Under the pieces are notes generated by a model that worked only from the letters and a program-made list of their open reading frames with translations, was not told where the DNA came from and made no database searches. Both the position numbers and the translations under genes were made by a program. From positions 124,001 to 188,000 of the IMG/VR virus record IMGVR_UViG_3300047095_000752: a stretch of DNA of 64,000 nt; one strand, written 5' to 3'. Shown here in pieces: positions 28,292-60,187 of this stretch; position 1 is the first letter of the stretch, and the number at the start of each line of letters is the position of its first letter.

Positions 28292-28678
28292 CTACGATTT
28301 GGCTTTGTAGTACTTTATACCAAGTTTGTCTAGCTCCGATTTTAACAATTGAATTCGCTCTTCGGAACTACTACAACAATCATTCTTTGTAATTGTATTT
28401 GAAACTCGGGTTGAATTCCAACCATATACTTTTCGCATTATACTAAGTGTGGTCATCTTTTGCTTTGAATTTTTATTTTCACACAGATTATATGTTATAC
28501 CATCGTCACCCTTTGGTTCCGAGTTTCTCAATATTGACTTTGATATTCCAGCTTTATTTATTAAAAACCCAACTAGACATTGACAGTCATCTTTATCGCA
28601 GAAGCTGCCTTTTATAAGCTTATCAGGTAACTGAACACGGGACGGCTTCTTGAGTGTGGGGGCTTTGACTGTTTTCAT
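28292..28678 (-). CDS. Hypothetical protein
   Basis: AAGGA RBS; CQCLVG motif. Confidence 0.55.
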   Translation of the reverse strand: MKTVKAPTLKKPSRVQLPDKLIKGSFCDKDDCQCLVGFLINKAGISKSILRNSEPKGDDGITYNLCENKNSKQKMTTLSIMRKVYGWNSTRVSNTITKNDCCSSSEERIQLLKSELDKLGIKYYKAKS

Positions 28679-29624
28679 TTTCGTATTCCTTTAGTCTAAG
28701 GTTAAACCAAGTGAGAAATTCATCTTGGTTGTATTTGGCTCTCTTGTCTGAGTTCTCGGTTCTTGTGATTATTCTTAAGTTTTCTCTTAAGTTGCAAATG
28801 GATTTGATTATGGCTTTATCATATTTTATGTCAAAATCGTTATCAACGAAAGCCGCTCGCGGAAATATATGATCCACTTCGTAAATATTTCTGAGATCGT
28901 GACGATGCTTTCTATTGTGTTTTGCTAGATATTTATTATTTAAAAAATCATTGTAGTTTGGATCATCTGATAGAATGTGAATTTGACTGTGGTGAAATGA
29001 TAAAAATTTTCGGCGAATATCTCTGGTCCGATCTATATTCCATCTCGTGTGGTTTTCACCTGATATACTTTTATAAAAACATTCTCTACATTTATAACCA
29101 TATTGAAAATCCCCAAATGTACGTTCAGATTTATGACCAGCCGGGCATTTCATTTCAAGTTTTGTATTAGCGTTTTTATATTCAGTGCTTAATAGAATAT
29201 AACCTGTAGATTCGATTGTTGATTTAACGTGTTCATATGAATGTTTTACTAAACCTGCGCATATCTTACATCTATTATTGTTATCTTTAAAACTATTAAA
29301 TATAACATCGTATGTATGATCTTTTGGGCATTTAACTGTTAATTTACTACAATTATTTTCATACACTCCCGATATATATTTATAACCTTTTGACTCTATA
29401 TAATTTATAACATCGTTTATATCTAATTTTCGTTTATTTAAACTGCATTGTTTACATCTACGTCCCGCTTTAAAATTGTTGTATATGGAGTAAAATATAT
29501 GATCATCGGGACATTTAATCTTTAGTTTATCACTATTTTTGGTATATGTTTTACTTAGTAGTTTATACCCGCTTTCTTTTTCAATTTCATTTTTAACATA
29601 TTCGTATTCTAATTTCTTAGGCAT
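28623..29624 (-). CDS. Zinc-finger-repeat HNH homing endonuclease (3 repeats)
   Basis: Three CPxxH..RCxxC repeats; DHIFPR...ICNLRENLRI. Confidence 0.8.
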   Translation of the reverse strand: MPKKLEYEYVKNEIEKESGYKLLSKTYTKNSDKLKIKCPDDHIFYSIYNNFKAGRRCKQCSLNKRKLDINDVINYIESKGYKYISGVYENNCSKLTVKCPKDHTYDVIFNSFKDNNNRCKICAGLVKHSYEHVKSTIESTGYILLSTEYKNANTKLEMKCPAGHKSERTFGDFQYGYKCRECFYKSISGENHTRWNIDRTRDIRRKFLSFHHSQIHILSDDPNYNDFLNNKYLAKHNRKHRHDLRNIYEVDHIFPRAAFVDNDFDIKYDKAIIKSICNLRENLRIITRTENSDKRAKYNQDEFLTWFNLRLKEYENENSQSPHTQEAVPCSVT

Positions 29625-31967
29625 TTATATCACTCCGTTGTCACTCAGATAATCTCCGATCAAGATGAACATACTGTCAGTATCGCCGTATGCAACATAT
29701 GGTAGATCGGAATTCTCAAAGTGTTCGATGTAGGATGTTTTAATAGTTGAATCATCCGTCTGTAAATAATTTGAAAGATGATATACGGAAAATTTAAGGG
29801 CTTCTTGACCTGTGCTGGTGATCGCTTTCGCCATATCTAGATTGTACATACGGAAAAATGGCAACCCCAGGATCCCATAAATGCTATTGCTGACAATTTT
29901 ATAACTGCTCTGTTTATTATCAAATTGCTTTAATTCTACCTTCATCCGCTCCTTAGTCACAGGATCCAGATCCGTATTTGTATTAATTTCTTGTCTAAGA
30001 TCGCCTAATTTCTTTTTATAAAGATCGCGCTGATCGCCCAAGTGAGTTAACACTTCGTGGAAGAATGATAGCTCAACTTCATGTTGAACAAAAAGGCATC
30101 CATTAATCGTTATAATATAATCATTCTTTACTATGAATTCTTCAAACTCAGCCGGAGTTAAATATATATCTTCGCTGGATCTAAGGATCGGATTAAGTGT
30201 AACCTTAATTTGATCCGGTAGTTGTGATTTTTTATATAGATATGAATATGCGTCTTTTTCTGACACTTTACCTTTGTATGTATTAGGTCCTATATTCATA
30301 GATTGAATTATTGATGGATACAGTGATTTAAAGTCAAAATCGACAACCCACTGGTGAACACCTACCTTTGGTTCCAGTACATATGCCCCTGAGAATGTCG
30401 CGTGATTTTGTTTTATTGAATTTCTGCATACTAAATTCTTATCCTTAGCGAACTTCAATAGAATTGGATCAACAAGACCAGATGTGGTCTCAGCCCGTCT
30501 CCAAGTACTACTACAAGTCTTTATAAGTTCAAATCGCAAATCTATATGGTGGAGAGCGTCTTCAAGTTCAGATAGCAGTACAGTATCAACCCCAGAATAT
30601 AATATAAACTTAACAAGATCACTTTCGTACATAGTATTAATGGTACCTTCAAAAGCGACTTTACCTTCACCCAGTACCTTCTGTGATATATTATTTAATT
30701 TATAACTTTCTTCTACATTTTGCGTAAGTTTTTTATATATTGCTAATTGGTCTACCATATATAGACCATATACTGTCGTCCCATAATATTCACTTATGTC
30801 AACATCAGCAAGTCCGATTGGAGACAATGAATCTACATCCAATCCCAATTTATGCATGCGATTTACTGTATAGGGCACATCGAATAGCTCTGAATTCCAC
30901 CCCGCCCAAACATCAGGATCGAGTTCTTTTGCTTTTTCTATAAATGCCGTTATAAGATCAGCTTCTGAGTCAAAAATCTTTATAATATATTCATTAATCT
31001 CTGGGAACACGCTTAAATTATCATATAAGCTCTTATGCCCTTTATTGTATGATGTTGTGTCCATTTCAGGTAGTTGTAGAATATAGACGTGTGTAGCCCC
31101 ATCACTGTCCAGTTTAAAAGATATCGAGTTAATCGGGAACTCAGCTTCAAGAGCGAATGGAAATGCTTTATGTTGTCCGGTATACACTTCAATATCCCAG
31201 TATAGTATCTTTAATTTATACTGGCATTCCGGTTCAGTTCTATTGTAATAATAGTCAATAGAATGTTTAATATCCGGTTTAACATCTTCTTCGTACATCG
31301 CTGTAGTTGGGAGAAGTCCAACTTTGGTTGTATGTAACTGTACGTCGGATACCTTCTTTATTATATCACTGTCTCTAATGTCCATAGGTACTGAATAGAA
31401 ATAAGTATCTTTTGAATTTACTGTGTGGTATTTTTTAGTTCCATTTGCATCTCTAAACACATATAGAATCTTACTTTTAAACTTATTGTATTGTATGTCA
31501 ATTAATATGTGATTTGAATCGTAACACCAATCGGGTAGTTTAAACGAGTGACATTTTGCTTCTTCATTTGTAACGACTGTGTTTATACTCTTTTCTCTAT
31601 TTTTAAAGTATAATTTAGATATGGTAGTAAATTGCTCTTCTACGAACGAATAGAAAAAGTCCAATTCACTACATACCTCGTCTAGATCATAAGTGATCAT
31701 CAACTTTATATCTTTATATTTAATACCTTTACCTACAACAGACTCAAACTTATCACCCAACTCGTCGTTAAACGTTTTCGTCACACCCTCCCCCATAATT
31801 ACAGTGAGTGTAGCATCTGTAGCTTTGATGTGATCTTCGGTTAGCTTACTTGTTGGATATATTTTATGATCTATCTTATCGAAGTTGTTAGTCTTCAAGA
31901 TCTTTTTGAATAACTTATTTTTTATAGTTTCTTGATTTGCATAAATTGCAATTGGAATTGAAGCCAC
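29625..31967 (-). CDS. Family B DNA polymerase, N-terminal subunit (UDG-like domain, 3'-5' exonuclease, palm motifs A-C)
   Basis: WDIEV (ExoI), GWNSELFD (ExoII), YSGVD (ExoIII), DFKSLYPS (A), KIVSNSIYG (B), YGDTDS (C); stop 15 aa after DTDS. Confidence 0.92.
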   Translation of the reverse strand: MASIPIAIYANQETIKNKLFKKILKTNNFDKIDHKIYPTSKLTEDHIKATDATLTVIMGEGVTKTFNDELGDKFESVVGKGIKYKDIKLMITYDLDEVCSELDFFYSFVEEQFTTISKLYFKNREKSINTVVTNEEAKCHSFKLPDWCYDSNHILIDIQYNKFKSKILYVFRDANGTKKYHTVNSKDTYFYSVPMDIRDSDIIKKVSDVQLHTTKVGLLPTTAMYEEDVKPDIKHSIDYYYNRTEPECQYKLKILYWDIEVYTGQHKAFPFALEAEFPINSISFKLDSDGATHVYILQLPEMDTTSYNKGHKSLYDNLSVFPEINEYIIKIFDSEADLITAFIEKAKELDPDVWAGWNSELFDVPYTVNRMHKLGLDVDSLSPIGLADVDISEYYGTTVYGLYMVDQLAIYKKLTQNVEESYKLNNISQKVLGEGKVAFEGTINTMYESDLVKFILYSGVDTVLLSELEDALHHIDLRFELIKTCSSTWRRAETTSGLVDPILLKFAKDKNLVCRNSIKQNHATFSGAYVLEPKVGVHQWVVDFDFKSLYPSIIQSMNIGPNTYKGKVSEKDAYSYLYKKSQLPDQIKVTLNPILRSSEDIYLTPAEFEEFIVKNDYIITINGCLFVQHEVELSFFHEVLTHLGDQRDLYKKKLGDLRQEINTNTDLDPVTKERMKVELKQFDNKQSSYKIVSNSIYGILGLPFFRMYNLDMAKAITSTGQEALKFSVYHLSNYLQTDDSTIKTSYIEHFENSDLPYVAYGDTDSMFILIGDYLSDNGVI

Positions 31968-31984
31968 GTGAAGTACCTTTTGGT

Positions 31985-33113
31985 TTATCTTTTAAATGCA
32001 GTTCTACGAATCAATCGAGTTGTATTTTTTCTGCTTACAAAATCATTTTCTGGAATCATATGATATAAATCTAAAAGAGACATACTCGCAAATTTACTAA
32101 ATAAAACTTTAAACATAGAATTTAAAATATAATCAAATCCATCGAGTCTTTCATAGGGTCTCTTTATGAATTTTGTTTTTTTATTATCATTTTTACAAAT
32201 AATAAATACGAATGAGAAAAAGTCAACTAATACACTATGTATAGCATCATGAATTAATAATGTAGTATAATATTCTATGTTTAGGTGATATCTAAATTTA
32301 GGCATAATTAAATACATGGGGTTGTAATAGTTTTCTTTTTTGTTCACTTTATAACCCTTACATTTTCATGATAGCGGTTGAATAGTTCTGAGTTACTACA
32401 GTAGTTGTGGTTATAATTTATTGTGAAGGATCTTCGGAAATTAGATCTGATCCCTAAGTCTAAAATTTTAACCGTGAACTTGAATTTCAGTCTGTTGAAA
32501 TCCAGATGTACGGTATAATAATCATTTCCTAATATTATAGCTATAAGTTTGGATAATTTTTTAACTTCTATTTGTTCCAACATATATGATATATAATATA
32601 TATTACTCCCGATATATCGAATTGATATTGGTGGTATAACTATTACACCGTGTGCCATAAATGCTCGTACTGATAATGGGTATATGACATTTGCTTAAAT
32701 TCAGTTCTTCTAAATTTATTTGAAGTTTTATCTTGTACAAGTATAGAACCATAAAACCAACATATCGCACGTAGATTGGCTGCGATTGGATAATGTATAT
32801 ATAAGGATAACTGAGTCAGGCATCCATAATATATATGCTTATCACTTTCGTTTCGGATACCATTTATTTTAAGTGTATTTTCGTTTTTCTTTCTGCGATA
32901 TCTTGGGATTATTATATTTGCATTCTTTCTTAGTGTAACCGACAACAATCCTTGAATGACACACATGGTCCTACCAAGTCCTTGTTGAAGTGTTTTTATT
33001 TTACCTTTATTCCCATATGAGATATCTTGATGTTGGTCGTGGATTTTATAATGATCTATATTTGGAAAGAATAAAAATAAAAATGGACTTTTACTTCTCT
33101 TTCTTATACTCAT
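31985..33113 (-). CDS. Three small hypothetical ORFs (31985-32347, 32344-32658, 32643-33113)
   Basis: Coupled ORFs between the two polymerase genes. Confidence 0.45.
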
Positions 33114-33445
33114 AGCAGTTTTATAAAGTTGGGGTTATTTTTTATTAGGGCGAGTAACGAATGTGATAATACTTCGATCATTTGCTCATAGAAGGAGTCG
33201 TCATCCTCGTCTAGGTTTAGACCGGCTTGAATCAGTATAGCGTGAAGGATCTCGTGTAAAATTGTAACTTCCATTTTACCTTTAGCTAAGGAACGTTTTA
33301 TAACGAGTTTTAAATTCTCATTATCTGTGTACGCAGAATAGTCGCCATCCGGGGTCATTTTTGGCTCATCTTCAAATACAATCTGATAGGTTAATGGTGA
33401 TATATATATTTCTTTTAGATCTGTTATTTTTTTGGCATCGGACAC
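33110..33445 (-). CDS. HExxH zinc metallopeptidase-like protein (ImmA/IrrE-like)
   Basis: TILHEILHAI ... EQMIE. Confidence 0.65.
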   Translation of the reverse strand: MSDAKKITDLKEIYISPLTYQIVFEDEPKMTPDGDYSAYTDNENLKLVIKRSLAKGKMEVTILHEILHAILIQAGLNLDEDDDSFYEQMIEVLSHSLLALIKNNPNFIKLL

Positions 33446-34404
33446 TGTGTTGACCTCTCGGTTGTATCGGTTGTATTATATTCATTTATCTTTTCATTAA
33501 ACCAAGCCATAAATTCTTCTTGGTTGTATTTACCACCTTTAGTGTTGTTATCTTTTTCGTGTATTATTCTTAAGTTTTCTCGTAGGTTGCAGATCTCTTT
33601 TATTATAGCCGGATCGTATATATTATCTAAGTTGTTATCAATAAATGCTATTCTCGGTTGAATGTGATCTACCGTATAATCAGATCTGTCCCATATATTA
33701 CTTGATGTCTTGGCGAGTTTTTGAGATTGGACGTGATTGTTGTAATTCGGATCATCATTTAATATATGTATTTTTTTATAATCAAACGATAAATATTTAG
33801 TTCTAGTTTGTCGGGTCCGGTCAGTCATCCAACGAACGTTATTTTCACCAGACTTATTTTCATAGGAACATTCCCTACACCTAACATCATTATTTTTAAA
33901 ATTATCAAAGATCATTTCTATTTTATGATTTTTAGGGCACAGTAGTTCGTCTTTATTTTTACAGCCTTTATATTCGGAAATTAACGTATAGCCATGATCT
34001 TTATAATAATTAAATACAAAATCATGACTATATTGCATTTTTATCTTATGACATTCTATACATCTACGTCGAGTCCTAAAATGGCTAAAACTCATTTCTA
34101 TTTTATGACCTTTCGGACATATCAATTCATCTTTTGTCATACACCCTTTATATTTAGAATTTAATGTATACCCACGTTTTTTATAATAATTTTCTACATA
34201 ACTTTCATCAGTTCTTTTATTTATATTTGAACATTCTCTACACTTGTGTCCGTTTTTAAAACTATTGAATAGCATTTCTATTTTATGATTTTTAGGACAT
34301 AATAATGTATTTTTTGTACGGGTATTAACATATTGTGTAAGTAATGTGTATCCACGTTCTGCATAATAATTAAATACGAATTCATGTGTTAATTTGTTTG
34401 GCAT
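33424..34404 (-). CDS. Zinc-finger-repeat HNH homing endonuclease (3 repeats)
   Basis: Three CPKxH repeats; DHIQPR...ICNLRENLRI. Confidence 0.8.
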   Translation of the reverse strand: MPNKLTHEFVFNYYAERGYTLLTQYVNTRTKNTLLCPKNHKIEMLFNSFKNGHKCRECSNINKRTDESYVENYYKKRGYTLNSKYKGCMTKDELICPKGHKIEMSFSHFRTRRRCIECHKIKMQYSHDFVFNYYKDHGYTLISEYKGCKNKDELLCPKNHKIEMIFDNFKNNDVRCRECSYENKSGENNVRWMTDRTRQTRTKYLSFDYKKIHILNDDPNYNNHVQSQKLAKTSSNIWDRSDYTVDHIQPRIAFIDNNLDNIYDPAIIKEICNLRENLRIIHEKDNNTKGGKYNQEEFMAWFNEKINEYNTTDTTERSTQCPMPKK

Positions 34405-34429
34405 AACTTTTCCTACATTATAGTTTAGT

Positions 34430-35206
34430 TTATTGAAATACTTGATCCATAGAATTTATGTTGTTTTGAATAAGAGCAAGAAGTACTTCCTTTACTCTGT
34501 CCGTCCATACGAATCGCAATTGTTCTGCCACGTTACATACATAATAGTCGGGTAACGATTCCTCTTCTGCGGGTAGGACCATATATTTCTGCTTAGATCC
34601 AATTAAATGCATGTTATCCAGAATACGCTGAGGTGCTTTCATTGGGTCGATCCCATTTATCCGGAAAAGATAACCTTTTGTACCGGGCGCAAAAGTTCGA
34701 TACTCTAGCATATTCCATAAGATCATCGCTTGTACCTGATACGGTGGCTTTCCCTTATATTCAGAAAGTGGCTTCGAAAAGTTCACGGATCCAGCAATCA
34801 ACTTAGAATTTTGATTACATAATTGTATAACTTCTTTTTCCGTGTCGACAATAAATTGCTTAATTTCATTTATGTTGATCTTCTCTACTTTCAAGATCAT
34901 ATCTAAGAGAGCTTGTACCTTTTCTTTGGTGTAAACCGGAAAGTTAGAGCGACGAATCACAAGTCCTTTTAGGTCGAATTCGGATACAGTTTTACCTTCT
35001 TTATTTTTTATAAAAAGACCATATTTCTTTTTTGTAAAGAATACCGCATTACTTGCCAATACTTCTTGTTTCAATTTTAGAGCATTATATTTGGGATTGG
35101 CTCGGTGCATCCTTATGAATTCGGGTAGTAGATCTTTATTTAAAATGTCTTCTAGCTTATGACACTCTTTTAAAACAATCTGTATAAGTTCTTCTTCGGT
35201 TTTCAT
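34430..35206 (-). CDS. Family B DNA polymerase, C-terminal subunit (rest of palm + thumb)
   Basis: LKQEV...FFTKKKYGL...KGLVIRRS (KKrY and KGxxxxRS motifs). Confidence 0.88.
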   Translation of the reverse strand: MKTEEELIQIVLKECHKLEDILNKDLLPEFIRMHRANPKYNALKLKQEVLASNAVFFTKKKYGLFIKNKEGKTVSEFDLKGLVIRRSNFPVYTKEKVQALLDMILKVEKININEIKQFIVDTEKEVIQLCNQNSKLIAGSVNFSKPLSEYKGKPPYQVQAMILWNMLEYRTFAPGTKGYLFRINGIDPMKAPQRILDNMHLIGSKQKYMVLPAEEESLPDYYVCNVAEQLRFVWTDRVKEVLLALIQNNINSMDQVFQ

Positions 35207-37137: not shown

Positions 37138-38490
37138 TTAATTTGTTGTTTTGTCAACCTTTTTAATCTGTTCTTCGAATGTATTGACTACGGATTCGGG
37201 ACTTATATGCTGTGTGCAACCGGGTAGTAAATTACTAACTCGGAATGGACATCTATGTTCCTTACTATTCAAATAACAGGGGTAAAAGCCACACTCATTG
37301 TTCCATGTATCGTCTGGATTCAGCCCCTGTACGGTTTCGTATCCACCAACCACATTGTATGCTGGGTAGGGTCCACAAATCGTCACAGCGGGCTTCCCGA
37401 GCGCCCCGGAAATATGGGCAAAGGAAGAGTCAATCGTAATCCCACCAACGCACGCGGAATAGATTGCAATTGCTTTTGTGATTGTATCGGACACGGCAGC
37501 AAGATTGAGTATATTATCACGATTTTCGATAAATGACTTATTTGACAACTGTGGGCTTAATATTGCGTTTGTACCTTTATTTTTAATATCAATATAATTT
37601 AAAGTATTAACGATAAAATTATTAACTTCAGGTTGCCTCTTAATATTATCAATAATACCAACCTTATATCCCCGCCCAATCAGAAGGCGACAAATCTCAG
37701 CCCATTTTTCATCTGGGTAGGCACGTAGATTTGATGTCGATGTCATATGTAGCAACACTGTATTATTTGGAATCAGTAACTTCATAGATTTCATTAAAAT
37801 GTGATTTGGAATTAATTTTGAAATGTAATCTTTTGAATCATATGTGAATTTACAAACGTCTCGATAAACATCATAATAATTCTGCTTCTGAGCAGCTTCA
37901 CAATTTTCAATGGCACCAATAAATGTAAGGTGATAATCATGAGCCATCATAAGCTTGGCGTCTAGAGGGAAGGGTACGACATTGTCAACGATACCCGGAG
38001 GGAAGTTGCTAAACAGTTCCATAAAGGCTGGCTTCGTAGAATATGTAATTTTACAGGAAGGCCATCGGTCTTTAATATGCTTGAGTACACTCTGGGATAC
38101 AATCAAGTCACCCAACCCACCCATACGCATTACAAGTAGAGATTTGTTGGTTAGGTCTTGACCCATATATCGGTTACATATATCTTCGAACTTAAGCTTA
38201 GATGGTTTTAAACATTTCTTTGTATCACCCTTTGTCTTATATCCATCCATAAAAATTGAAAGTGGGAGAACGTAATTATTTCCCGACTTCATTTGATATA
38301 CGTCGTCGAATGTAAAATCGCGAGTCACTCTTGCGATTGTCATTGCCGTGGGTGCTTCAAGAAGTTCTTGTATATTTTTAAACTTACGATCCGTCACATA
38401 ATTTTCAAGTCCAAATTTCTTAACCACATCTTTTGTTAACTTGAATTTCTTATGTGCATCTTTATATGAATTTAGATTTTTCTTCGCCAT
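37138..38490 (-). CDS. Glycosyltransferase family 9 (heptosyltransferase-like); likely start MAKK at 38490
   Basis: RMGGLGDLI; ITIDSSFAHISGALGKPAVTICGP; C-terminal CxPC...C...C. Confidence 0.85.
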   Translation of the reverse strand: MAKKNLNSYKDAHKKFKLTKDVVKKFGLENYVTDRKFKNIQELLEAPTAMTIARVTRDFTFDDVYQMKSGNNYVLPLSIFMDGYKTKGDTKKCLKPSKLKFEDICNRYMGQDLTNKSLLVMRMGGLGDLIVSQSVLKHIKDRWPSCKITYSTKPAFMELFSNFPPGIVDNVVPFPLDAKLMMAHDYHLTFIGAIENCEAAQKQNYYDVYRDVCKFTYDSKDYISKLIPNHILMKSMKLLIPNNTVLLHMTSTSNLRAYPDEKWAEICRLLIGRGYKVGIIDNIKRQPEVNNFIVNTLNYIDIKNKGTNAILSPQLSNKSFIENRDNILNLAAVSDTITKAIAIYSACVGGITIDSSFAHISGALGKPAVTICGPYPAYNVVGGYETVQGLNPDDTWNNECGFYPCYLNSKEHRCPFRVSNLLPGCTQHISPESVVNTFEEQIKKVDKTTN

Positions 38491-38564
38491 GCCTTTAGTC
38501 CTCTGCGGTGATTGTTTCGGTTTGTGAGTGTATGATATCACACAAAACTTTTTTTTTCAATACC

Positions 38565-39395
38565 GGACAGATTTATGTAAACCACTCGGGGGAGGAACGA
38601 AGAGGGGGGTTAGGGGGGTGATGAAAGGAGGGGGCAAAACTAATTGAAATCGGAAGAATAGGAAATTGTAATTTATGGAACGAAGTGGAATAAATTAGAA
38701 TTTCTGTAGAAAGATCATGAAAATATAAAAACAGAAAGATCAAAAATAAAATTGTAATAAATAGAGAAATATATTGAATATGTGAAACTACTAAAATATA
38801 AAGAAATAGATCTAAGTAAAAATTAAAAGTGAAACTTTAAAATTTACTTGCTAAAAAGTTTAGATCGAAATTAATAAAAAAGATCAAGTAAATGGAATAA
38901 ATTAAAACTTCAATATTATTTTCAAGTGGGAACTCCTTTTTTGGATTTCCCATCTTTTAATTAATATTTCCGAATTTCAATATGAAATAATTTTACAATA
39001 TTGTTTTCAAGCGTAAGCTTTTAAATAATATTGTTTTTTATTTTTAATAAAATTTATTTATTGAGATTTTATTTTAAAGATCAGATATAAGATCAGGAAT
39101 ACTGTTTACGAATATTAATTTAAAATCCAGAGTCATACTCCCATTTCATTCCCGTATGACTCTGGACATATTGAGATATAATATACAATCTTCTTATAAT
39201 ATGTACTATATAATATTATATCTATAACTTTTTTGTAAAATATCTCAATTATCTCAATTTAGTATATAAAGTATTGATATTGAAAGAGTTACAAAACTTG
39301 AGATAAGGTTGAGTAGTTGAGATGTAGCGGAAAAATTCAGGGACTGTAATTTTTCCATAGCTTAAATTATAATAAAACTTGAATTTTGACCTATT
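38565..39395. other. Long non-coding region, candidate replication origin
   Basis: No ORF of 60 aa or more. G-tracts 38588-38634; A-rich strand-biased tract with 7 AGATC; 16-bp direct repeat 38911/38996; 13-bp hairpin 39126-39166; TTGAGAT repeats; IHF consensus 39267-39279. Confidence 0.6.
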
Positions 39396-40930
39396 TAAAT
39401 TACAAGTGGACTCAAATCCGCTTGAGATGATGTGTGGAGGTTAGGATCCAATTTAAACTTTGTGGTGTGTCCGAATTTTGAGAAAGAAACAGTCCACCCA
39501 TTCATTTCCAGTACATCAGTGTTTTCTTTTAATCTTCTGGCGAATACTCTTGGTTTTAATTTATTTGAATATGCTGTATTGGACTCCAATATTTTGATAA
39601 TTTCAGTCGGAGTACCTTCAATATAATTATATCCAATTTTATTAAAATCAAATTCTATAATCGATTGTATCAGTGGATCTAGATCCGTAAGGTTTTGCAG
39701 TTGAGAATTTACAATTGTTTTAATTATAGTAGAAATGTTAAATGTAGAATCAGTCGGTATTAAATGTTGAAGTAATTCACCAAATCTTGTAAATCTATAT
39801 TTCTCGGTAAATTTAATATTATTTGTATTCTTTAAAAATGATTGTGCTTCGTAAGCTAATTCCGATAATATATTACTTCTATTATCTAATATAAATTTTA
39901 TTAATAATTCTTCAGGTATTGAATAATCTATTCTATCTTCAAAGAATATTGGGAGGACTCTATCCTTGATATCCTCCCGCTTAGCGAAGTTCGCATTCCT
40001 CGTAGTTATAATCATAGATGATACAATTTGTTTTTTATGAGTTTTAGAATCTGAGAATAAAATTCGCTCACCAAGTTCACCACCAGTTGCAGCCAATGTC
40101 ATTGTGTCTGGAAACCAACTCGGCGGTTTTGAATCTAAGTTATCTATAGCGTAAACAAAATTCTCAGTTATACAAGCCATCAGACTTCTTTTATTATCTG
40201 GAAAAATTGAAACATTACTTCTCTCGCCCATGAATAATTTTATGATAGCTTTTGAAGTTAATGTCTTACCCGAACTTTTATTTCCGTAAAATAATAAAAT
40301 TGGTAGTGGTTTTATTTTTAATAGAGTACCTACAATCCAAGACTTCAACACATATTTTTGAATCTCTCCGGTGTAGATATAAGTACCATCTGGAATAAGG
40401 ACATTTATATTAAAAGCGTCGGTACATGAATATACAGAATTACAATTAGAAGGTTCCCAATCGGGAAGTGTATAGTCGCCATCAAAATATATATCGCTGT
40501 ATCCATTTTTAACTTTAATTAGATTATCATGTTCGTCGAAAGTCACTATATGTTTATCGCCACAACTTACATATAATTTATTATTAAAGATACAAGTGAA
40601 TTTATGTAAAGTTATAATTCGGTCACTTAGTAGTATCTTGTCTTTTATATAATTGAATAATTCTTTTGAAAATTTGTTTTGAAAAAAATCAACTCCGAAG
40701 GTTACATTAAACAGAGATTGAATTTCCTGATATGATGCGTCGAACTGGACGACTTCCCCGGATGGTAGGTGTATATATGGCACATACTTTTCTTTTTCGT
40801 TTATAACTTTAAATACATGATTACCTTCATATAGTATGTTAAATATAGTTTCTTTTATTTTTATTAGAGCCTTTGGATTTTTCTTTCTTTTATTTAGAAA
40901 CGAAAAAATCAACTTTTGAATTGAGTCCAT
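39395..40930 (-). CDS. P-loop replication ATPase / helicase-like protein with C-terminal wHTH
   Basis: Walker A GNKSSGKT; YAIDNLD; ATGG..xERILFSD; ITT; DIKDR. Confidence 0.7.
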   Translation of the reverse strand: MDSIQKLIFSFLNKRKKNPKALIKIKETIFNILYEGNHVFKVINEKEKYVPYIHLPSGEVVQFDASYQEIQSLFNVTFGVDFFQNKFSKELFNYIKDKILLSDRIITLHKFTCIFNNKLYVSCGDKHIVTFDEHDNLIKVKNGYSDIYFDGDYTLPDWEPSNCNSVYSCTDAFNINVLIPDGTYIYTGEIQKYVLKSWIVGTLLKIKPLPILLFYGNKSSGKTLTSKAIIKLFMGERSNVSIFPDNKRSLMACITENFVYAIDNLDSKPPSWFPDTMTLAATGGELGERILFSDSKTHKKQIVSSMIITTRNANFAKREDIKDRVLPIFFEDRIDYSIPEELLIKFILDNRSNILSELAYEAQSFLKNTNNIKFTEKYRFTRFGELLQHLIPTDSTFNISTIIKTIVNSQLQNLTDLDPLIQSIIEFDFNKIGYNYIEGTPTEIIKILESNTAYSNKLKPRVFARRLKENTDVLEMNGWTVSFSKFGHTTKFKLDPNLHTSSQADLSPLVI

Positions 40931-48793: not shown

Positions 48794-49798
48794 ATGAGTA
48801 ATACAAGATATAACATACAAACAGCAACCGAAGTGTTTAAACAATATGGTTTAGAATTACTCGAAACTGAATATAAAAATTTAGACGTACGAATGAAGTA
48901 TAAATGCTTAACATGTCATTATGTGGGGGATAAGCCTTTATATGATGTTTTAAGATTTAAATCTGGATGTAAAAGTTGTAATTTAAATAAATTATACGAA
49001 TCAAAGAAATATACCATAGATTTTGCGAGAGACAGTTTTTTAAAAAATGGGTTGATTCTATTAGATGATGTATATATAAATAATCAGACTCCTATGAAAT
49101 TTGAATGTGCAACGTGTTGTAATTCAGGTCAAAATAATTTAGCAAATATATTAAATCAAGGTCAAGGGTGTAAAAAATGTAAAGATGAGGCGTCAGCCTC
49201 CAAAAAACGATTCAATATAGAATATGCTAAAACTGTATATTTAGAAAAAAATTTAGAACTCCTTGAAAATGTTTATATAAATAGTAACACAAAAATGAAA
49301 TATCGGTGTTTGATTTGTAATTATATAGGACAAAATAGTTTAGGTAGTATGGATGATAAAAGCCGTGGGTGTAGAGAATGTCATTATAGAAATATGTGCG
49401 GTAAAAATCATTGGGCGTGGAATCCCAAAAAAACTGAATTGAATGAAATGATTAGAGTAAAAAGATCTAAACATTGGGTTATAAAACATATGACTGATGA
49501 TCCGTTGTATAATGAATGGTTATTAGGGTATGACACTTATGAAATTCACCACACTCCTCAAATTAATGACTGGAGTTCGTATTTAATTGAAAATAACCTA
49601 ACTGATAATAATGAAATTATAATGTATGTAAGAGAGACTGCAAATACTAGAGAAAGACTTAGTATAGTTCCGACTAAAATTCATAAATCCATGCATAAAA
49701 ATAGAAGTTATAAGTTCAATAAAGAAAAATTCGAAAAATTTTTAGAAGAAAATGATATAGGAGTATTAGATTATGCCAATCGAAGTCCCATACAATGA
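48794..49798 (+). CDS. Zinc-finger-repeat HNH-like endonuclease (3 CxxC-type repeats)
   Basis: GLELLE..Y...MKYKC..C...GC..C repeats; KHMxDDP; EIHH...N...L...H. Confidence 0.7.
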   Translation: MSNTRYNIQTATEVFKQYGLELLETEYKNLDVRMKYKCLTCHYVGDKPLYDVLRFKSGCKSCNLNKLYESKKYTIDFARDSFLKNGLILLDDVYINNQTPMKFECATCCNSGQNNLANILNQGQGCKKCKDEASASKKRFNIEYAKTVYLEKNLELLENVYINSNTKMKYRCLICNYIGQNSLGSMDDKSRGCRECHYRNMCGKNHWAWNPKKTELNEMIRVKRSKHWVIKHMTDDPLYNEWLLGYDTYEIHHTPQINDWSSYLIENNLTDNNEIIMYVRETANTRERLSIVPTKIHKSMHKNRSYKFNKEKFEKFLEENDIGVLDYANRSPIQ

Positions 49799-58585: not shown

Positions 58586-60187
58586 TTATAATGTTTGGTT
58601 TATAAGGTAGCGACCACAATCCCATATTTTAACGGTATATTCTTTTGAGTACTTACTATATCTATTGCTAAAATTGTCATCTATATAATAAAAGTCTGGT
58701 TCAATGCTTGTAGAAATTTCGCATTGAGAATCTAATTTAAAATATCGCTTATTTATTAAAACTGGCATTCCAATACCCCAAATATAATCTATAACAGAAT
58801 GGTCTAGTTTAGTTCCACACCTCATGACAATATTATCCTTTATCAGTACCACAAATACAAGTTCATCATTATAATAATATCCAACATTAGTATCAGACTT
58901 AGTATATCCTTCTATGTGATTTTTATTTAAGAATTTTCGGGATATTCTTTTATTAATATATCTCATGTCACACTCATTGAAATCTATAATTTTGTTTAGA
59001 TTTAATTTTTCTTTTATTATTGACTGGATGATGTCGGATTTATATATCCATTCATCCTCAAATATATGTAATAAGTCAATACCTTTATTAAGACATAGAT
59101 TCGTTTTGTTTAAGTGGTATTGAGAGTCTTTACCTTGGAGTTCAGAATGCCAATACAATCCGTTAAATTCTATAGCTAAGTTATAGTCGGGTAAATAGAT
59201 ATCAAGTTCGAGAGGTGATATTATAGATCGATTTGAAGTTGATATGTTATAATCTATAGGTAAAATGGATTTAATAAAATCAACAATTTCGTTTTCATAT
59301 TTTGATGTATATGGTAGTGGATCGCATACATAGCATCTTGGTATTCGACCATTATCTAAATGATCTTCGAAGGTTGTGTTACAATCGTTACATTGAAATC
59401 TATATTTCTCATTTTTGACTCCATTGTAATTATATAAATTAAATAATGGAGTCAAAGATTTAAACTTATGTGAATTTAATATTTTATTGAATTTACGAGC
59501 TAATGATTTTTTTCTAAGTTTAGTCTTTCCTAAATCCGTTTTTAAATAATGTATTTCACCATAACGTTTTATGTTTGTTTCCTTTATTTTTTGTTTTACC
59601 GTATCACTTTGAAAAGTATATTTTACACCATACTTCTCTAAATTTGTTTTTTTGATATTATTTTGTATGGTTGGATTATTAAATGGGTTTTCAAATCCAT
59701 GTTGCTTTAAATTGGTTTGTTTAATTTGTTCTAAAATAATATCGGATTTGAGTGGGTTATCCACGCCATATTTTTTAAAGCACGTAGTTTTAATTTTCTC
59801 TCTACACTCATTATTTTCTTTCGAAAGAAATTCTTCAACCCCATATCTTTCTAAATTAGTTTTCTTTATTTTATCTCGTATTTGTTTAATTTGTGTTATA
59901 TACTCAACTCCGTATTTTTCTAAATTAGTTTTCTTTGTTTTTTCAGTTCTTTTTTGTATAAATTCTGGATCTTTAAACTTACACTTCGTCGAACAATAAA
60001 TATAAAACCCCTTAGCTAGATTTTTAAATTTTAATTTGTTATTACAAACCCTACAGTTAAGTTTTACATTAGGATTTATATATTTTATATAGAATTCTTC
60101 TTTAGAAGCTTCAGGATGAATTTTTGATAAGTGTGTCGATAATTGATTTATATTTGAATACTTTTTATCACATAGGCTGCAATCCAT
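58586..60187 (-). CDS. Homing endonuclease, PD-(D/E)XK/Vsr-like (Hef-type) with KxTNLEKYGV repeats
   Basis: Six K.T....(Y/H)G repeats; ELDIYLPDYNLAIEFNGLYWHS; HIFEDEW. Confidence 0.85.
   Translation of the reverse strand: MDCSLCDKKYSNINQLSTHLSKIHPEASKEEFYIKYINPNVKLNCRVCNNKLKFKNLAKGFYIYCSTKCKFKDPEFIQKRTEKTKKTNLEKYGVEYITQIKQIRDKIKKTNLERYGVEEFLSKENNECREKIKTTCFKKYGVDNPLKSDIILEQIKQTNLKQHGFENPFNNPTIQNNIKKTNLEKYGVKYTFQSDTVKQKIKETNIKRYGEIHYLKTDLGKTKLRKKSLARKFNKILNSHKFKSLTPLFNLYNYNGVKNEKYRFQCNDCNTTFEDHLDNGRIPRCYVCDPLPYTSKYENEIVDFIKSILPIDYNISTSNRSIISPLELDIYLPDYNLAIEFNGLYWHSELQGKDSQYHLNKTNLCLNKGIDLLHIFEDEWIYKSDIIQSIIKEKLNLNKIIDFNECDMRYINKRISRKFLNKNHIEGYTKSDTNVGYYYNDELVFVVLIKDNIVMRCGTKLDHSVIDYIWGIGMPVLINKRYFKLDSQCEISTSIEPDFYYIDDNFSNRYSKYSKEYTVKIWDCGRYLINQTL

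What the first reader, a model, noticed from the sequence alone, without database searches (positions are those of the whole stretch)
38565..38900. Promoter-like motif pointing into a four-tract G-quadruplex: a possible R-loop/G4-primed origin or ncRNA
Seen: GGACAGAT (one mismatch to the GGACAAAT motif) at 38565 points into non-coding DNA. About 15 nt later come G5-G6-G6-G5 tracts (38588-38634), extreme for this AT-rich genome, then ~270 nt of purine/A-rich, strand-biased sequence with repeated AGATC. Known: T4 origins are primed by persistent R-loops, and the mitochondrial CSB2 G-tract stabilises a primer RNA through a hybrid G-quadruplex. Inference: the phage RNAP makes a G4-stabilised primer here, or this is a structured non-coding RNA.
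Basis: partly seen in the sequence, partly recalled or inferred. Interest (0 to 1): 0.7.

Follow-up and report, generated by a model that had tools for sequence, protein, structure and literature searches.

The report
G-rich RNA gene beside phage origin
In an uncultivated freshwater jumbo phage, a phage-type late promoter fires straight into four conserved runs of G and a ~380-base non-coding, A-rich transcription unit that lies in the most AT-rich stretch of the genome, next to a unique cluster of repeats and a replicative helicase gene. It is probably an RNA made at the phage's replication origin, a kind of origin not yet described in phages.

Summary
GGACAGAT (38565) fits the genome's dominant promoter motif, which has the layout of the AR9 non-virion RNA polymerase late promoter. 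The predicted start is G38577. The G5-G6-G6-G5 block (38588-38634) is unique in the 245-kb genome.

Six syntenic metagenomic relatives keep three things: the promoter, at least the central G-tract pair, and an intrinsic terminator 280-380 nt downstream. The first ~175 nt are better conserved than the flanking genes. A hairpin (38661-38705) keeps pairing through compensatory changes. So this is a conserved non-coding transcription unit.

The context looks like an origin:
- The unit overlaps the most AT-rich stretch of the genome.
- It points at the only TTGAGAT repeat cluster.
- That cluster lies directly downstream of a D5/SF3-type helicase gene, inside the replication gene module.

My best reading (0.4) is an origin-associated transcript whose G clusters start a persistent RNA:DNA hybrid or hybrid G-quadruplex. 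A free-standing regulatory RNA is nearly as likely (0.35). Transcription, G4 or R-loop formation and the replication start site are all untested. Three relatives keep only two G tracts, and one keeps the repeats without the RNA unit.

The parts
37138..38490 (-). Flanking gene: 450-aa glycosyltransferase-family-9-like protein. Its ATG is at 38490.
   Evidence: ORF list; Pfam PF01075, E 2.6e-6; homologs P0001-P0013.
38532..38560 (-). Sigma-70-like promoter (TTGAAA, 17 nt, TG-n-TATCAT) for the GT9-like gene, back to back with the late-type promoter.
   Evidence: Consensus scan. The same TTGAAAAAA...TG.TATNAT layout stands upstream of the GT9 gene in L229. This is a consensus match only.
38565..38581 (+). 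Late-type phage promoter GGACAGATTTATGTAAA. The predicted start is G38577.
   Evidence: Motif statistics. The layout GACA-N6-T-R(+1) equals the AR9 nvRNAP late consensus A(-11)ACA-N6-T-A/G(+1) (PMC7598289). It is kept in the relatives as GGACAAAT, GGACAGAT, AGACAAAT or CGACAAAT at constant spacing.
38588..38634 (+). G5-N11-G6-N3-G6-N11-G5 block on the non-template strand, at +12 to +58 of the predicted RNA.
   Evidence: It is identical in L017, has three loop substitutions and one extra G in L019, and keeps the same tract pattern with different loops in L024. Only the central pair is kept in L021, L023, L228 and L227.
38661..38705 (+). Hairpin 1: a 15-bp stem with a conserved 13-nt loop, GGAACGAAGUGGA (38677-38689).
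   Evidence: z = -4.9. All 7 differences between the window and L019 lie in the stem and keep pairing, with 3 double changes. Two G.U pairs fit only the + strand. Equivalent hairpins with other stems occur in L024, L023, L228 and L021.
38706..38925 (+). A-rich body of the unit with AAGATC boxes (38711, 38736, 38880). The part from 38775 to 38900 is variable and carries an 80-nt indel in relatives.
   Evidence: The 38797-38876 deletion variant appears in L017 and in contigs of runs X24-X26.
38926..38958 (+). Intrinsic terminator: a stem at 38926-38953 followed by CUUUU.
   Evidence: Fold, z = -3.6. A terminator hairpin plus T-run of different sequence stands at the matching place in all six relatives.
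38690..39389 (.). The most AT-rich stretch of the whole genome (GC 16.5-21.4% at the 200, 400 and 700 bp scales). Candidate DNA-unwinding region.
39126..39166 (.). Hairpin 2: a perfect 13-bp stem with a conserved 15-nt loop (GGGAAUGAAAUGGGA when read on the minus strand).
   Evidence: z -6 to -8. In L019 the stem differs (ATGGAATGATAC/GTATCATTCCAT) but the loop differs at only one base. A similar stem-loop occurs in L229.
39061..39428 (.). TTGAGAT repeat (iteron) cluster: 7 exact copies and 1 variant. The core is an inverted set, ATCTCAA-tt-ATCTCAA (39242-39257), about 40 bp, then TTGAGAT-aagg-TTGAGTA-g-TTGAGAT (39298-39323).
   Evidence: Seven of the 47 genome copies fall within 362 bp (P about 1e-12). 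The cluster is kept in L017, L019, L021, L024, L228 and L229.
39395..40930 (-). Flanking gene: 511-aa D5/SF3-type helicase with an invariant GxxxxGKT Walker A. Candidate self-loading initiator.
   Evidence: Atlas structural matches to the helicase halves of primase-helicases, TM 0.7-0.8. AlphaFold model, pLDDT 75. Foldseek matches to ASFV PrimPol, MPXV E5, NrS-1 CTR and SCCmec Cch, E 7e-9 to 2e-6. Alignment A3. Neither Pfam nor a PDB sequence search recognises it.

Best explanation
The finding is the 5' end of a conserved, non-coding transcription unit that sits in the probable replication origin of a jumbo phage encoding its own multisubunit RNA polymerases.

Supported by comparison:
- The unit has a late-type phage promoter with a predicted start at G38577.
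- Four G tracts lie on the non-template strand at +12 to +58.
- A hairpin with a conserved purine loop follows, then an A-rich body and an intrinsic terminator at 38926-38958.
- The unit overlaps the most AT-rich stretch of the genome.
- It is aimed at the genome's only TTGAGAT repeat cluster, which lies directly downstream of a D5/SF3 helicase gene.

Inferred mechanism:
- The phage RNA polymerase transcribes into the easily melted region.
- The G clusters close to the 5' end let the nascent RNA re-anneal to the C-rich template, or form a DNA:RNA hybrid G-quadruplex with the displaced strand.
- This anchors a persistent R-loop, which the purine-rich RNA extends.
- The opened DNA then helps the helicase to load at the repeats, or the RNA 3' end primes leading-strand synthesis.
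For: Promoter class:
- The motif precedes virion structural genes, RNA polymerase beta and beta-prime genes and, in a one-mismatch copy (GAACAAAT), an endolysin gene.
- It has the AR9 late-promoter layout.

Selection:
- 38550-38750 is 98-100% identical to L017 and 82-92% identical to L019. The flanking coding DNA is 80-88% and 70-78% identical.
- The G tracts are invariant while the loop sequences change in L024.

RNA unit:
- A terminator stands 280-380 nt downstream in all 7 sequences.
- The hairpin shows covariation.
- The RNA is 8% C, so the G tracts have no Watson-Crick partner in group A.

Origin context:
- Lowest GC of the genome.
- Unique iteron cluster.
- SF3 helicase fold.
- The DNA polymerase lies on one side and the clamp loader and primase on the other.
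- The main divergent strand switch is at 40930/41201, and a local minimum of cumulative GC skew lies nearby.

Precedents:
- A hybrid G4 needs only two non-template G tracts (PMC3664831).
- CSB II primer formation in mitochondria (PMC3488243, PMC4176368).
- AR9 nvRNAP can start from single-stranded promoters, with no known role for that ability (PMC7598289).
Against: - No transcript, R-loop, G4 or initiation site has been observed.
- The promoter class precedes late-type genes, whereas origin firing is expected early.
- A conserved intrinsic terminator stops the unit about 170 bp before hairpin 2 and about 210-280 bp before the repeats, apart from an outlying copy at 39061.
- Relative L229 keeps the repeats, a hairpin-2-like stem-loop and the GT9 promoter but has no RNA unit. 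The RNA is therefore not an obligatory origin part.
- Group B relatives have two G tracts, not four, and only a weak purine bias (0.55-0.60).
- The global minimum of cumulative GC skew lies elsewhere, near 205-210 kb.
- No RNase H1 gene was found in the genome, which is 78% complete.
- The helicase was not detected in more distant relatives or in AR9.
Confidence: 0.4

Rival explanations
1. This is a free-standing, trans-acting structured ncRNA of about 300-380 nt made late by the phage RNA polymerase. The 5' G tracts fold into an RNA G-quadruplex, or bind a protein, and stabilise the RNA or give it its activity. The conserved hairpin loop is a binding site. Its position beside the origin-like region is incidental, as for a cassette inserted into a large intergenic region.
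For: - The promoter and terminator are conserved while the middle is variable and full of indels.
- Hairpin 1 shows covariation and has a conserved loop.
- The promoter is of the late class.
- L229 lacks the unit but keeps the repeats, so the two are separable.
- With the G4 option, the predicted energy falls from -58.6 to -80.5 kcal/mol.
- Contigs of four RNA-labelled runs cover about 38616-38952, and two of them end exactly at the terminator. This is weak evidence.
Against: - No Rfam family matches, and no target or partner can be named.
- The four-tract G4 is not conserved in group B.
- This reading does not explain why the unit coincides with the genome's AT-richness extreme, nor why it points at the repeats in all 7 loci. 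Those loci were, however, found through synteny.
Confidence: 0.35
2. This is a DNA-level cis element. The G/C tracts act as duplex or folded DNA. They could be a protein-binding site of the origin or promoter region. They could also be a template-strand G4 roadblock or insulator between the helicase gene and the divergent GT9 operon. The RNA would be a by-product.
For: - The central G5/6-N2-5-G5/6 pair is the only part of the block shared by all relatives, whatever flanks it.
- It lies 105-170 bp upstream of the GT9 start codon in every locus.
- It sits back to back with a sigma-70-like promoter.
Against: - The late promoter, terminator and hairpin are co-conserved with it.
- The two G.U pairs in hairpin 1 fit only the + strand.
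- The distance to the GT9 start varies as much as the distance to the promoter does.
Confidence: 0.15
3. The block is a leader or ribosome-binding region for a tiny peptide, or simply chance composition.
For: - GGAGG-like Shine-Dalgarno strings lie within the block.
- A short ORF follows it (UUG-AAA-UCG-GAA-GAA-UAG). L019 has an AUG-started 11-codon ORF at the same place.
Against: - The peptide length and sequence are not conserved.
- Group B has no start codon at a usable spacing.
- Chance is excluded by the statistics and by the conservation.
Confidence: 0.03

Closest known systems
Phage T4 origins ori(uvsY)/oriF and ori(34)/oriG: a promoter plus a downstream unwinding element, with a persistent R-loop as primer
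   Same: A promoter fires directly into an exceptionally AT-rich, easily unwound stretch inside a phage with a T4-type DNA polymerase and clamp loader. The RNA would be purine-rich.
   Different: - The promoter is of the AR9-like multisubunit phage polymerase type and of the late class, not a MotA-dependent middle promoter.
- G-tract clusters, an intrinsic terminator, an iteron array and an SF3 helicase gene are present here and absent from the T4 origins.
- Nothing has been tested experimentally.
Mitochondrial LSP - CSB II - OH: a G-quadruplex or hybrid G4 that stabilises the R-loop and forms the primer (PMC3488243, PMC4176368)
   Same: G tracts on the non-template strand lie downstream of a promoter at a putative origin. 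As few as two tracts suffice for a hybrid G4 (PMC3664831), which would fit both groups of relatives.
   Different: - The G block starts about 12 nt from the start site, not about 100 nt.
- The tracts are G5-6 with long purine loops.
- There is no evidence of premature termination at the block, and the conserved terminator is about 320 nt further on.
- The polymerase is multisubunit rather than single-subunit.
ColE1 RNA II primer
   Same: A structured, promoter-defined RNA of several hundred nt. In ColE1 a G-rich segment pairs with a C-run of the template to start a persistent hybrid at the origin.
   Different: There is no RNA I-type antisense partner, no evidence of RNase H processing, and no sequence or Rfam similarity.
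SaPI/PICI and SCCmec replicons: a self-loading SF3 helicase (Rep, Cch) with iterons flanking an AT-rich region next to its gene (PMC9371898)
   Same: The helicase fold matches Cch and D5-type helicases. Short repeats in inverted sets lie immediately downstream of the helicase gene, next to AT-rich DNA.
   Different: - This is a 245-kb lytic-type jumbo phage, not a satellite.
- The repeat sequence is different.
- Binding is untested.
- A promoter-driven G-rich RNA unit is not part of the SaPI origins.
AR9 non-virion RNA polymerase late promoters (PMC7598289, PMC5312081)
   Same: The layout (A/G)ACA-N6-T-R(+1) is the same. The motif precedes virion and virion-polymerase genes. The genome encodes beta and beta-prime-like subunits.
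   Different: - The motif is longer here (GGACAAAT...TRTAAA).
- The proteins are only 23-30% identical to those of the AR9 group.
- Uracil DNA is unknown for this phage.
- AR9 itself has no paired G5 tracts and no homolog of the helicase.

Membership tests
AR9-type nvRNAP late promoter | (A/G)ACA at -11 to -8, six free bases, T at -1, purine at +1 | tested here: met
   In 19 intergenic GGACAAAT sites, position 12 is T in 15 of 19 and position 13 is a purine in 19 of 19. The finding's site reads GACA-GATTTA-T-G. The consensus is taken from PMC7598289.
AR9-type nvRNAP late promoter | Precedes late genes (virion, virion RNA polymerase, lysis) in a genome encoding multisubunit phage RNA polymerases | tested here: met
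   Downstream genes include a tail-tube-like protein, a virion structural protein, RNA polymerase beta and beta-prime genes and, after a one-mismatch copy, an endolysin gene.
AR9-type nvRNAP late promoter | Recognised by the phage polymerase on the template strand, with a mapped start site | not testable with these tools
   No host, enzyme or 5'-end data are available.
Intramolecular G-quadruplex motif | Four G tracts of at least 3 with loops of 1-7 nt | tested here: not met
   The loops are 11, 3 and 11 nt. The strict pattern finds only a different site in the genome.
Intramolecular G-quadruplex motif | Four G tracts with loops up to 12 nt and a high G4Hunter score | tested here: met
   (score 1.96, top of the genome). 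With the G4 option the fold places a G4 here in the window, L017, L019 and L024.
Intramolecular G-quadruplex motif | All four tracts conserved in relatives | tested here: inconclusive
   Four tracts are kept in the window, L017, L019 and L024 with changed loops. Only two tracts are present in L021, L023, L228 and L227.
Co-transcriptional DNA:RNA hybrid G-quadruplex | At least two G tracts on the non-template strand downstream of the start site | tested here: met
   This holds for all 8 loci (same calls). The criterion is taken from PMC3664831.
Co-transcriptional DNA:RNA hybrid G-quadruplex | The structure forms during transcription | not testable with these tools
   This needs in vitro transcription and structure probing.
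R-loop-primed origin (T4 oriF/oriG type) | A promoter immediately upstream of a DNA-unwinding element | tested here: met
   The promoter is at 38565, and 38690-39389 is the lowest-GC stretch of the genome.
R-loop-primed origin (T4 oriF/oriG type) | A persistent RNA:DNA hybrid, with replication starting at it | not testable with these tools
   Only Logan contigs were available, so no read-depth profile or DRIP data exist.
Iteron origin served by a self-loading SF3 helicase | An SF3/D5-type helicase encoded next to the repeats | tested here: met
   The evidence is the fold only. Sequence profiles do not detect the family.
Iteron origin served by a self-loading SF3 helicase | Clustered short repeats, unique in the genome, beside AT-rich DNA | tested here: met
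   The repeats are conserved in relatives.
Iteron origin served by a self-loading SF3 helicase | The helicase binds the repeats | not testable with these tools
   The protein-DNA job in complex prediction was not folded. This is no evidence either way.
Independent ncRNA gene | A conserved promoter and intrinsic terminator bracketing non-coding sequence | tested here: met
   There is no conserved ORF.
Independent ncRNA gene | Secondary structure supported by covariation | tested here: met
   Hairpin 1 keeps 15 of 15 pairs, with 3 double changes between the two distinct sequences. The power is low: 64 of 500 shuffles reach the same value. Hairpins at the same position with unrelated stems occur in 4 more relatives.
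Independent ncRNA gene | The transcript is observed | tested here: inconclusive
   Four RNA-labelled wastewater runs hold contigs over about 38616-38952. They are flagged as probably DNA, and they were selected through this very stretch.
Any Rfam family | A covariance-model match | tested here: not met
   No match at E up to 1 in 38000-40000.

The most novel reading that the evidence does not exclude
This would be the first bacteriophage replication origin of the G-quadruplex/R-loop kind. A phage-encoded multisubunit RNA polymerase of the AR9 type can start from single-stranded promoters. Here it would make a G-tract-anchored RNA that stays hybridised in the genome's most AT-rich region. That RNA would open or prime the origin for an adjacent self-loading SF3 helicase.
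Probability: 0.25. Interest if true: 0.85.

Novelty: new variant of a known kind. Interest (0 to 1): 0.6.

Why it matters
To my knowledge, the replication origins of jumbo phages that encode their own multisubunit RNA polymerases have not been mapped. [quoted passage not shown]

This locus offers a compact candidate of about 900 bp that can be tested. It contains a promoter, G tracts, an unwinding region, repeats and a helicase gene. If the G-rich RNA works at the origin, it would carry the mitochondrial CSB II, ColE1 and T4 principle of RNA-primed or RNA-opened origins over to a new polymerase and a new virus group. It would also give a natural bacterial-virus model for hybrid G-quadruplexes.

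If it is instead a free ncRNA, it is a new conserved phage RNA family with an unusual 5' G-tract domain.

Tried and rejected
- Rfam: no family matches.
- Near-identical DNA in the phage collection: none.
- Close-relative scans of IMG/VR with three proteins: nothing found.
- Exact and loose G-tract patterns in IMG/VR: only chance matches. A hit resembling group B (L231) lies inside a 251-aa ORF, and L232 is an ordinary GC hairpin.
- More distant GT9 homolog loci (35% identity or less): another gene sits upstream and the element is absent.
- Helicase homolog: not found in two larger related records or in AR9. AR9 has no paired G5 tracts.
- A second G cluster at genome 219,332 is GC-rich and looks like coding DNA. 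GGGGGTAGGGG at genome 60,312 is one arm of a terminator hairpin.
- DGR template repeat or another internal repeat: the region matches only itself in the genome.
- GATC enrichment as such is not significant.
- CsrA-type GGA sponge: I counted 10 GGA in 382 nt. By my own estimate this is close to what the base composition predicts.
- GC skew: ambiguous, because it follows gene orientation.
- RNA-labelled runs: inconclusive.
- The global MAFFT alignment of the seven units misaligns the two groups, so I compared the modules separately.

Full report
**What the window is.** The window is bases 124,001-188,000 of a 245,225-bp IMG/VR virus record (34.8% GC, estimated 78% complete). Near-identical DNA occurs in many lake-water metagenomes. 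The genome has the following features:
- A T4-like family-B DNA polymerase interrupted by HNH endonuclease genes, plus a clamp loader and a primase-like gene.
- Beta and beta-prime-like subunits of multisubunit RNA polymerases.
- Only 23-30% amino-acid identity to known RNA-polymerase-encoding jumbo phages such as Staphylococcus S6/SA1, Listeria LPJP1, Yersinia phiR1-37 and YerA41.

**The observation.** The finding lies in a 904-bp intergenic region (38491-39394). This region separates two minus-strand genes: a glycosyltransferase-9-like gene (37138-38490) and a 511-aa gene (39395-40930).
- Four of the genome's 61 runs of five or more G fall within 47 bp here. This is the highest G4Hunter 50-nt window of the genome.
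- The next 320 nt are 70% purine on the + strand, in the top 0.01% of windows.
- GATC itself is not enriched. AAGATC occurs 5 times, always on the + strand.

**The promoter motif.**
- GGACAAAT is the most enriched 8-mer upstream of genes, at 22-fold.
- Nineteen of its 22 copies are intergenic, co-oriented with the next gene and 24-322 nt (15 of them within 81 nt) upstream of its start codon.
- Downstream of the 8-mer, position 12 is T in 15 of 19 sites, position 13 is a purine in 19 of 19, and TAAA tends to follow.
- Read as GACA-N6-T-R, this is the layout of the late promoter of the AR9 non-virion RNA polymerase, A(-11)ACA-N6-T-A/G(+1) (PMC7598289).
- The genes behind the motif include a tail-tube-like protein, a virion structural protein and RNA polymerase beta and beta-prime genes. 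A one-mismatch copy (GAACAAAT) precedes an endolysin gene. It is therefore a late-type class.
- The finding's copy, GGACAGATTTATGTAAA, deviates only at position 6 and meets all the downstream preferences. The predicted start is G38577.
- The same G variant precedes an isolated + strand gene at window 24288. It also heads the homologous unit in relative L227.

**Relatives.** Proteins 31-95% (GT9) and 51-90% (helicase) identical to the two flanking genes exist in metagenomes. Their contigs gave six syntenic intergenic regions and two partial ones.
- All six complete regions start with the promoter motif, as GGACAAAT, AGACAAAT, CGACAAAT or GGACCAAAT.
- All end with an intrinsic terminator 280-380 nt downstream. 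The terminator sequences are unrelated.
- Group A (window, L017, L019, L024) has G5-N11/12-G6-N2/3-G6-N11/12-G5. The block is identical in L017. L019 shows three loop substitutions and one added G. L024 keeps the tract pattern, but all three loops are different purine-rich sequences.
- Group B (L021, L023, L228 and the partial L227) keeps only the central G5/6-N2-5-G5/6 pair. It is flanked by mirror-image pyrimidine tracts that can pair with the G tracts.
- In a sliding comparison, 38550-38750 is the best-conserved part of the locus. It is 98-100% identical to L017 and 82-92% identical to L019. The adjacent coding DNA is 80-88% and 70-78% identical.
- The 3' half of the unit is variable and carries an 80-nt indel.

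**RNA structure.**
- The group A RNAs contain 8-9% C, so the G tracts have no Watson-Crick partners. With the G-quadruplex option, the minimum free energy falls from -58.6 to -80.5 kcal/mol.
- Hairpin 1 (38661-38705) has a 13-nt loop, GGAACGAAGUGGA. All seven differences between the window and L019 lie in the stem and preserve pairing. There are three double changes and one U-A to U.G change.
- Two wobble pairs fit only the + strand.
- Hairpins with similar purine-rich CGAAG loops but unrelated stems stand at the same place in L024, L023, L228 and L021. Most have z-scores of -4 to -6.
- A covariance model built from group A finds the L023 hairpin at E about 0.1.
- With so few distinct sequences, the formal covariation statistics are weak (64 of 500 shuffles).

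**Context: an origin-like region.**
- The 511-aa neighbour is not recognised by Pfam, PHROGs or PDB sequence profiles. It has an invariant Walker A motif.
- Its predicted fold (pLDDT 75) matches D5/SF3 helicases: ASFV PrimPol, MPXV E5, the NrS-1 C-terminal region and SCCmec Cch, with E from 7e-9 to 2e-6.
- Directly downstream of this gene lies the genome's only cluster of TTGAGAT repeats. Seven of the 47 genome copies fall within 362 bp (P about 1e-12). The core is an inverted arrangement.
- The repeats are conserved in L017, L019, L021, L024, L228 and L229.
- Between the repeats and the G tracts lies the most AT-rich 200, 400 and 700 bp of the whole genome, at GC 16.5-21.4%.
- That stretch holds a second hairpin (39126-39166) whose loop is conserved while its stem co-varies in L019.
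- The locus sits between the DNA polymerase and the clamp loader and primase genes. It is 1.5 kb from the main divergent strand switch.
- Cumulative GC skew has a local minimum here but not the global one.
- The phage encodes two Dam-like methyltransferases. No RNase H1 was found.
- This is the architecture of iteron origins served by self-loading SF3 helicases, as in SaPI Rep and SCCmec Cch (PMC9371898). A promoter that fires into the unwinding region is added to it.

**Transcription evidence.** The only RNA-labelled runs that hold the stretch are four wastewater 'RNA-Seq cDNA' libraries carrying a relative.
- Each has a contig that begins just 3' of, or within, the G block (38616-38652).
- In two runs the contig ends exactly at the terminator (38951 and 38952).
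- Depths are 3-10. Scattered coding pieces have depths of 2-14, or up to 36 in X23.
- The tool flags three of the four runs (X24-X26) as probably DNA. They were also found through this very conserved stretch. I therefore count this evidence as inconclusive.

**Interpretation.** What the comparison shows is a conserved non-coding transcription unit with a selected G-tract domain at its 5' end, embedded in an origin-like region. The following two readings go beyond that and are inference.
- My preferred reading (0.4) is that the transcript acts at the origin. G clusters on the non-template strand just after the start site are the classical nucleation sites for R-loops and for DNA:RNA hybrid G-quadruplexes. 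These need only two tracts (PMC3664831), which would cover both groups of relatives. The purine-rich RNA and the extremely AT-rich duplex would favour a persistent hybrid. Such a hybrid could open the region for the helicase or provide a primer, as at the T4 origins oriF and oriG, in ColE1 and at mitochondrial CSB II.
- Against this reading stand five points: the late promoter class, the conserved terminator before the repeats, L229 (repeats without the unit), the two-tract relatives, and the lack of any direct data.
- A free trans-acting ncRNA is almost as likely (0.35). A purely DNA-level role is possible (0.15).

**Verdict.** I rate the element a new variant of a known kind, meaning transcription-activated or RNA-primed origins, or else a new phage ncRNA family. 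Interest is 0.6.

Noticed in passing
window 28623-35206: The family-B DNA polymerase gene is in pieces (29625-31967 and 34430-35206), interleaved with HNH or homing-endonuclease genes (28623-29624 and 33424-34404). More HNH genes lie at 48794-49798 and 58586-60187.
   Followed up: partly
window 24288 (genome 148288): A second GGACAGAT variant sits 35 nt upstream of an isolated + strand 102-aa ORF inside a long minus-strand block. So the G variant of the promoter is probably functional elsewhere too.
   Followed up: partly
window 38677-38689, 38594-38602 and 39139-39153: The loop of hairpin 1 (GGAACGAAGUGGA, + strand) resembles the loop of hairpin 2 read on the minus strand (GGGAAUGAAAUGGGA). 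GGAACGAAG is also repeated between the first two G tracts. This may be a shared binding motif on opposite strands flanking the AT-rich core.
   Followed up: no
L229:4534-4824: This relative has the TTGAGAT/ATCTCAA repeats, a stem-loop like hairpin 2 and the GT9 promoter in only 292 bp, with no G-rich RNA unit. The unit therefore behaves as a cassette of about 560 bp that was either inserted or lost.
   Followed up: partly
L021, L023, L228 (for example L023:2100-2150, minus strand): In group B relatives the two G tracts are flanked by a near-perfect mirror repeat of pyrimidine tracts (CCUUUUCUUUAUUAAGA | AGAUUAAUUUCUUUUGG). I have no explanation for it.
   Followed up: no
genome 92188-92949 (-) and 199134-199874 (+), outside the window: The phage encodes two D12-class (Dam-like) N6-adenine methyltransferases. 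This may bear on the AAGATC boxes in the AT-rich region.
   Followed up: partly
window 38582-38734: In one lake metagenome (X3) the assembled contigs break on both sides of the G-tract block (at 38581 and 38735). In the RNA-labelled runs no contig crosses the block. This may be a sequencing or assembly problem with the G tracts and is not a finding in itself.
   Followed up: no
window 37138-38490: A heptosyltransferase-like (GT9) gene is conserved inside the replication module, between the DNA polymerase and the helicase. Its role in a phage is unclear.
   Followed up: no
window 38643-38657: The box AAUUGAAAUC just after the last G tract is kept in L017 and L024. A short ORF starts here, with UUG in the window and AUG in L019, but its length and sequence are not conserved.
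   Followed up: partly
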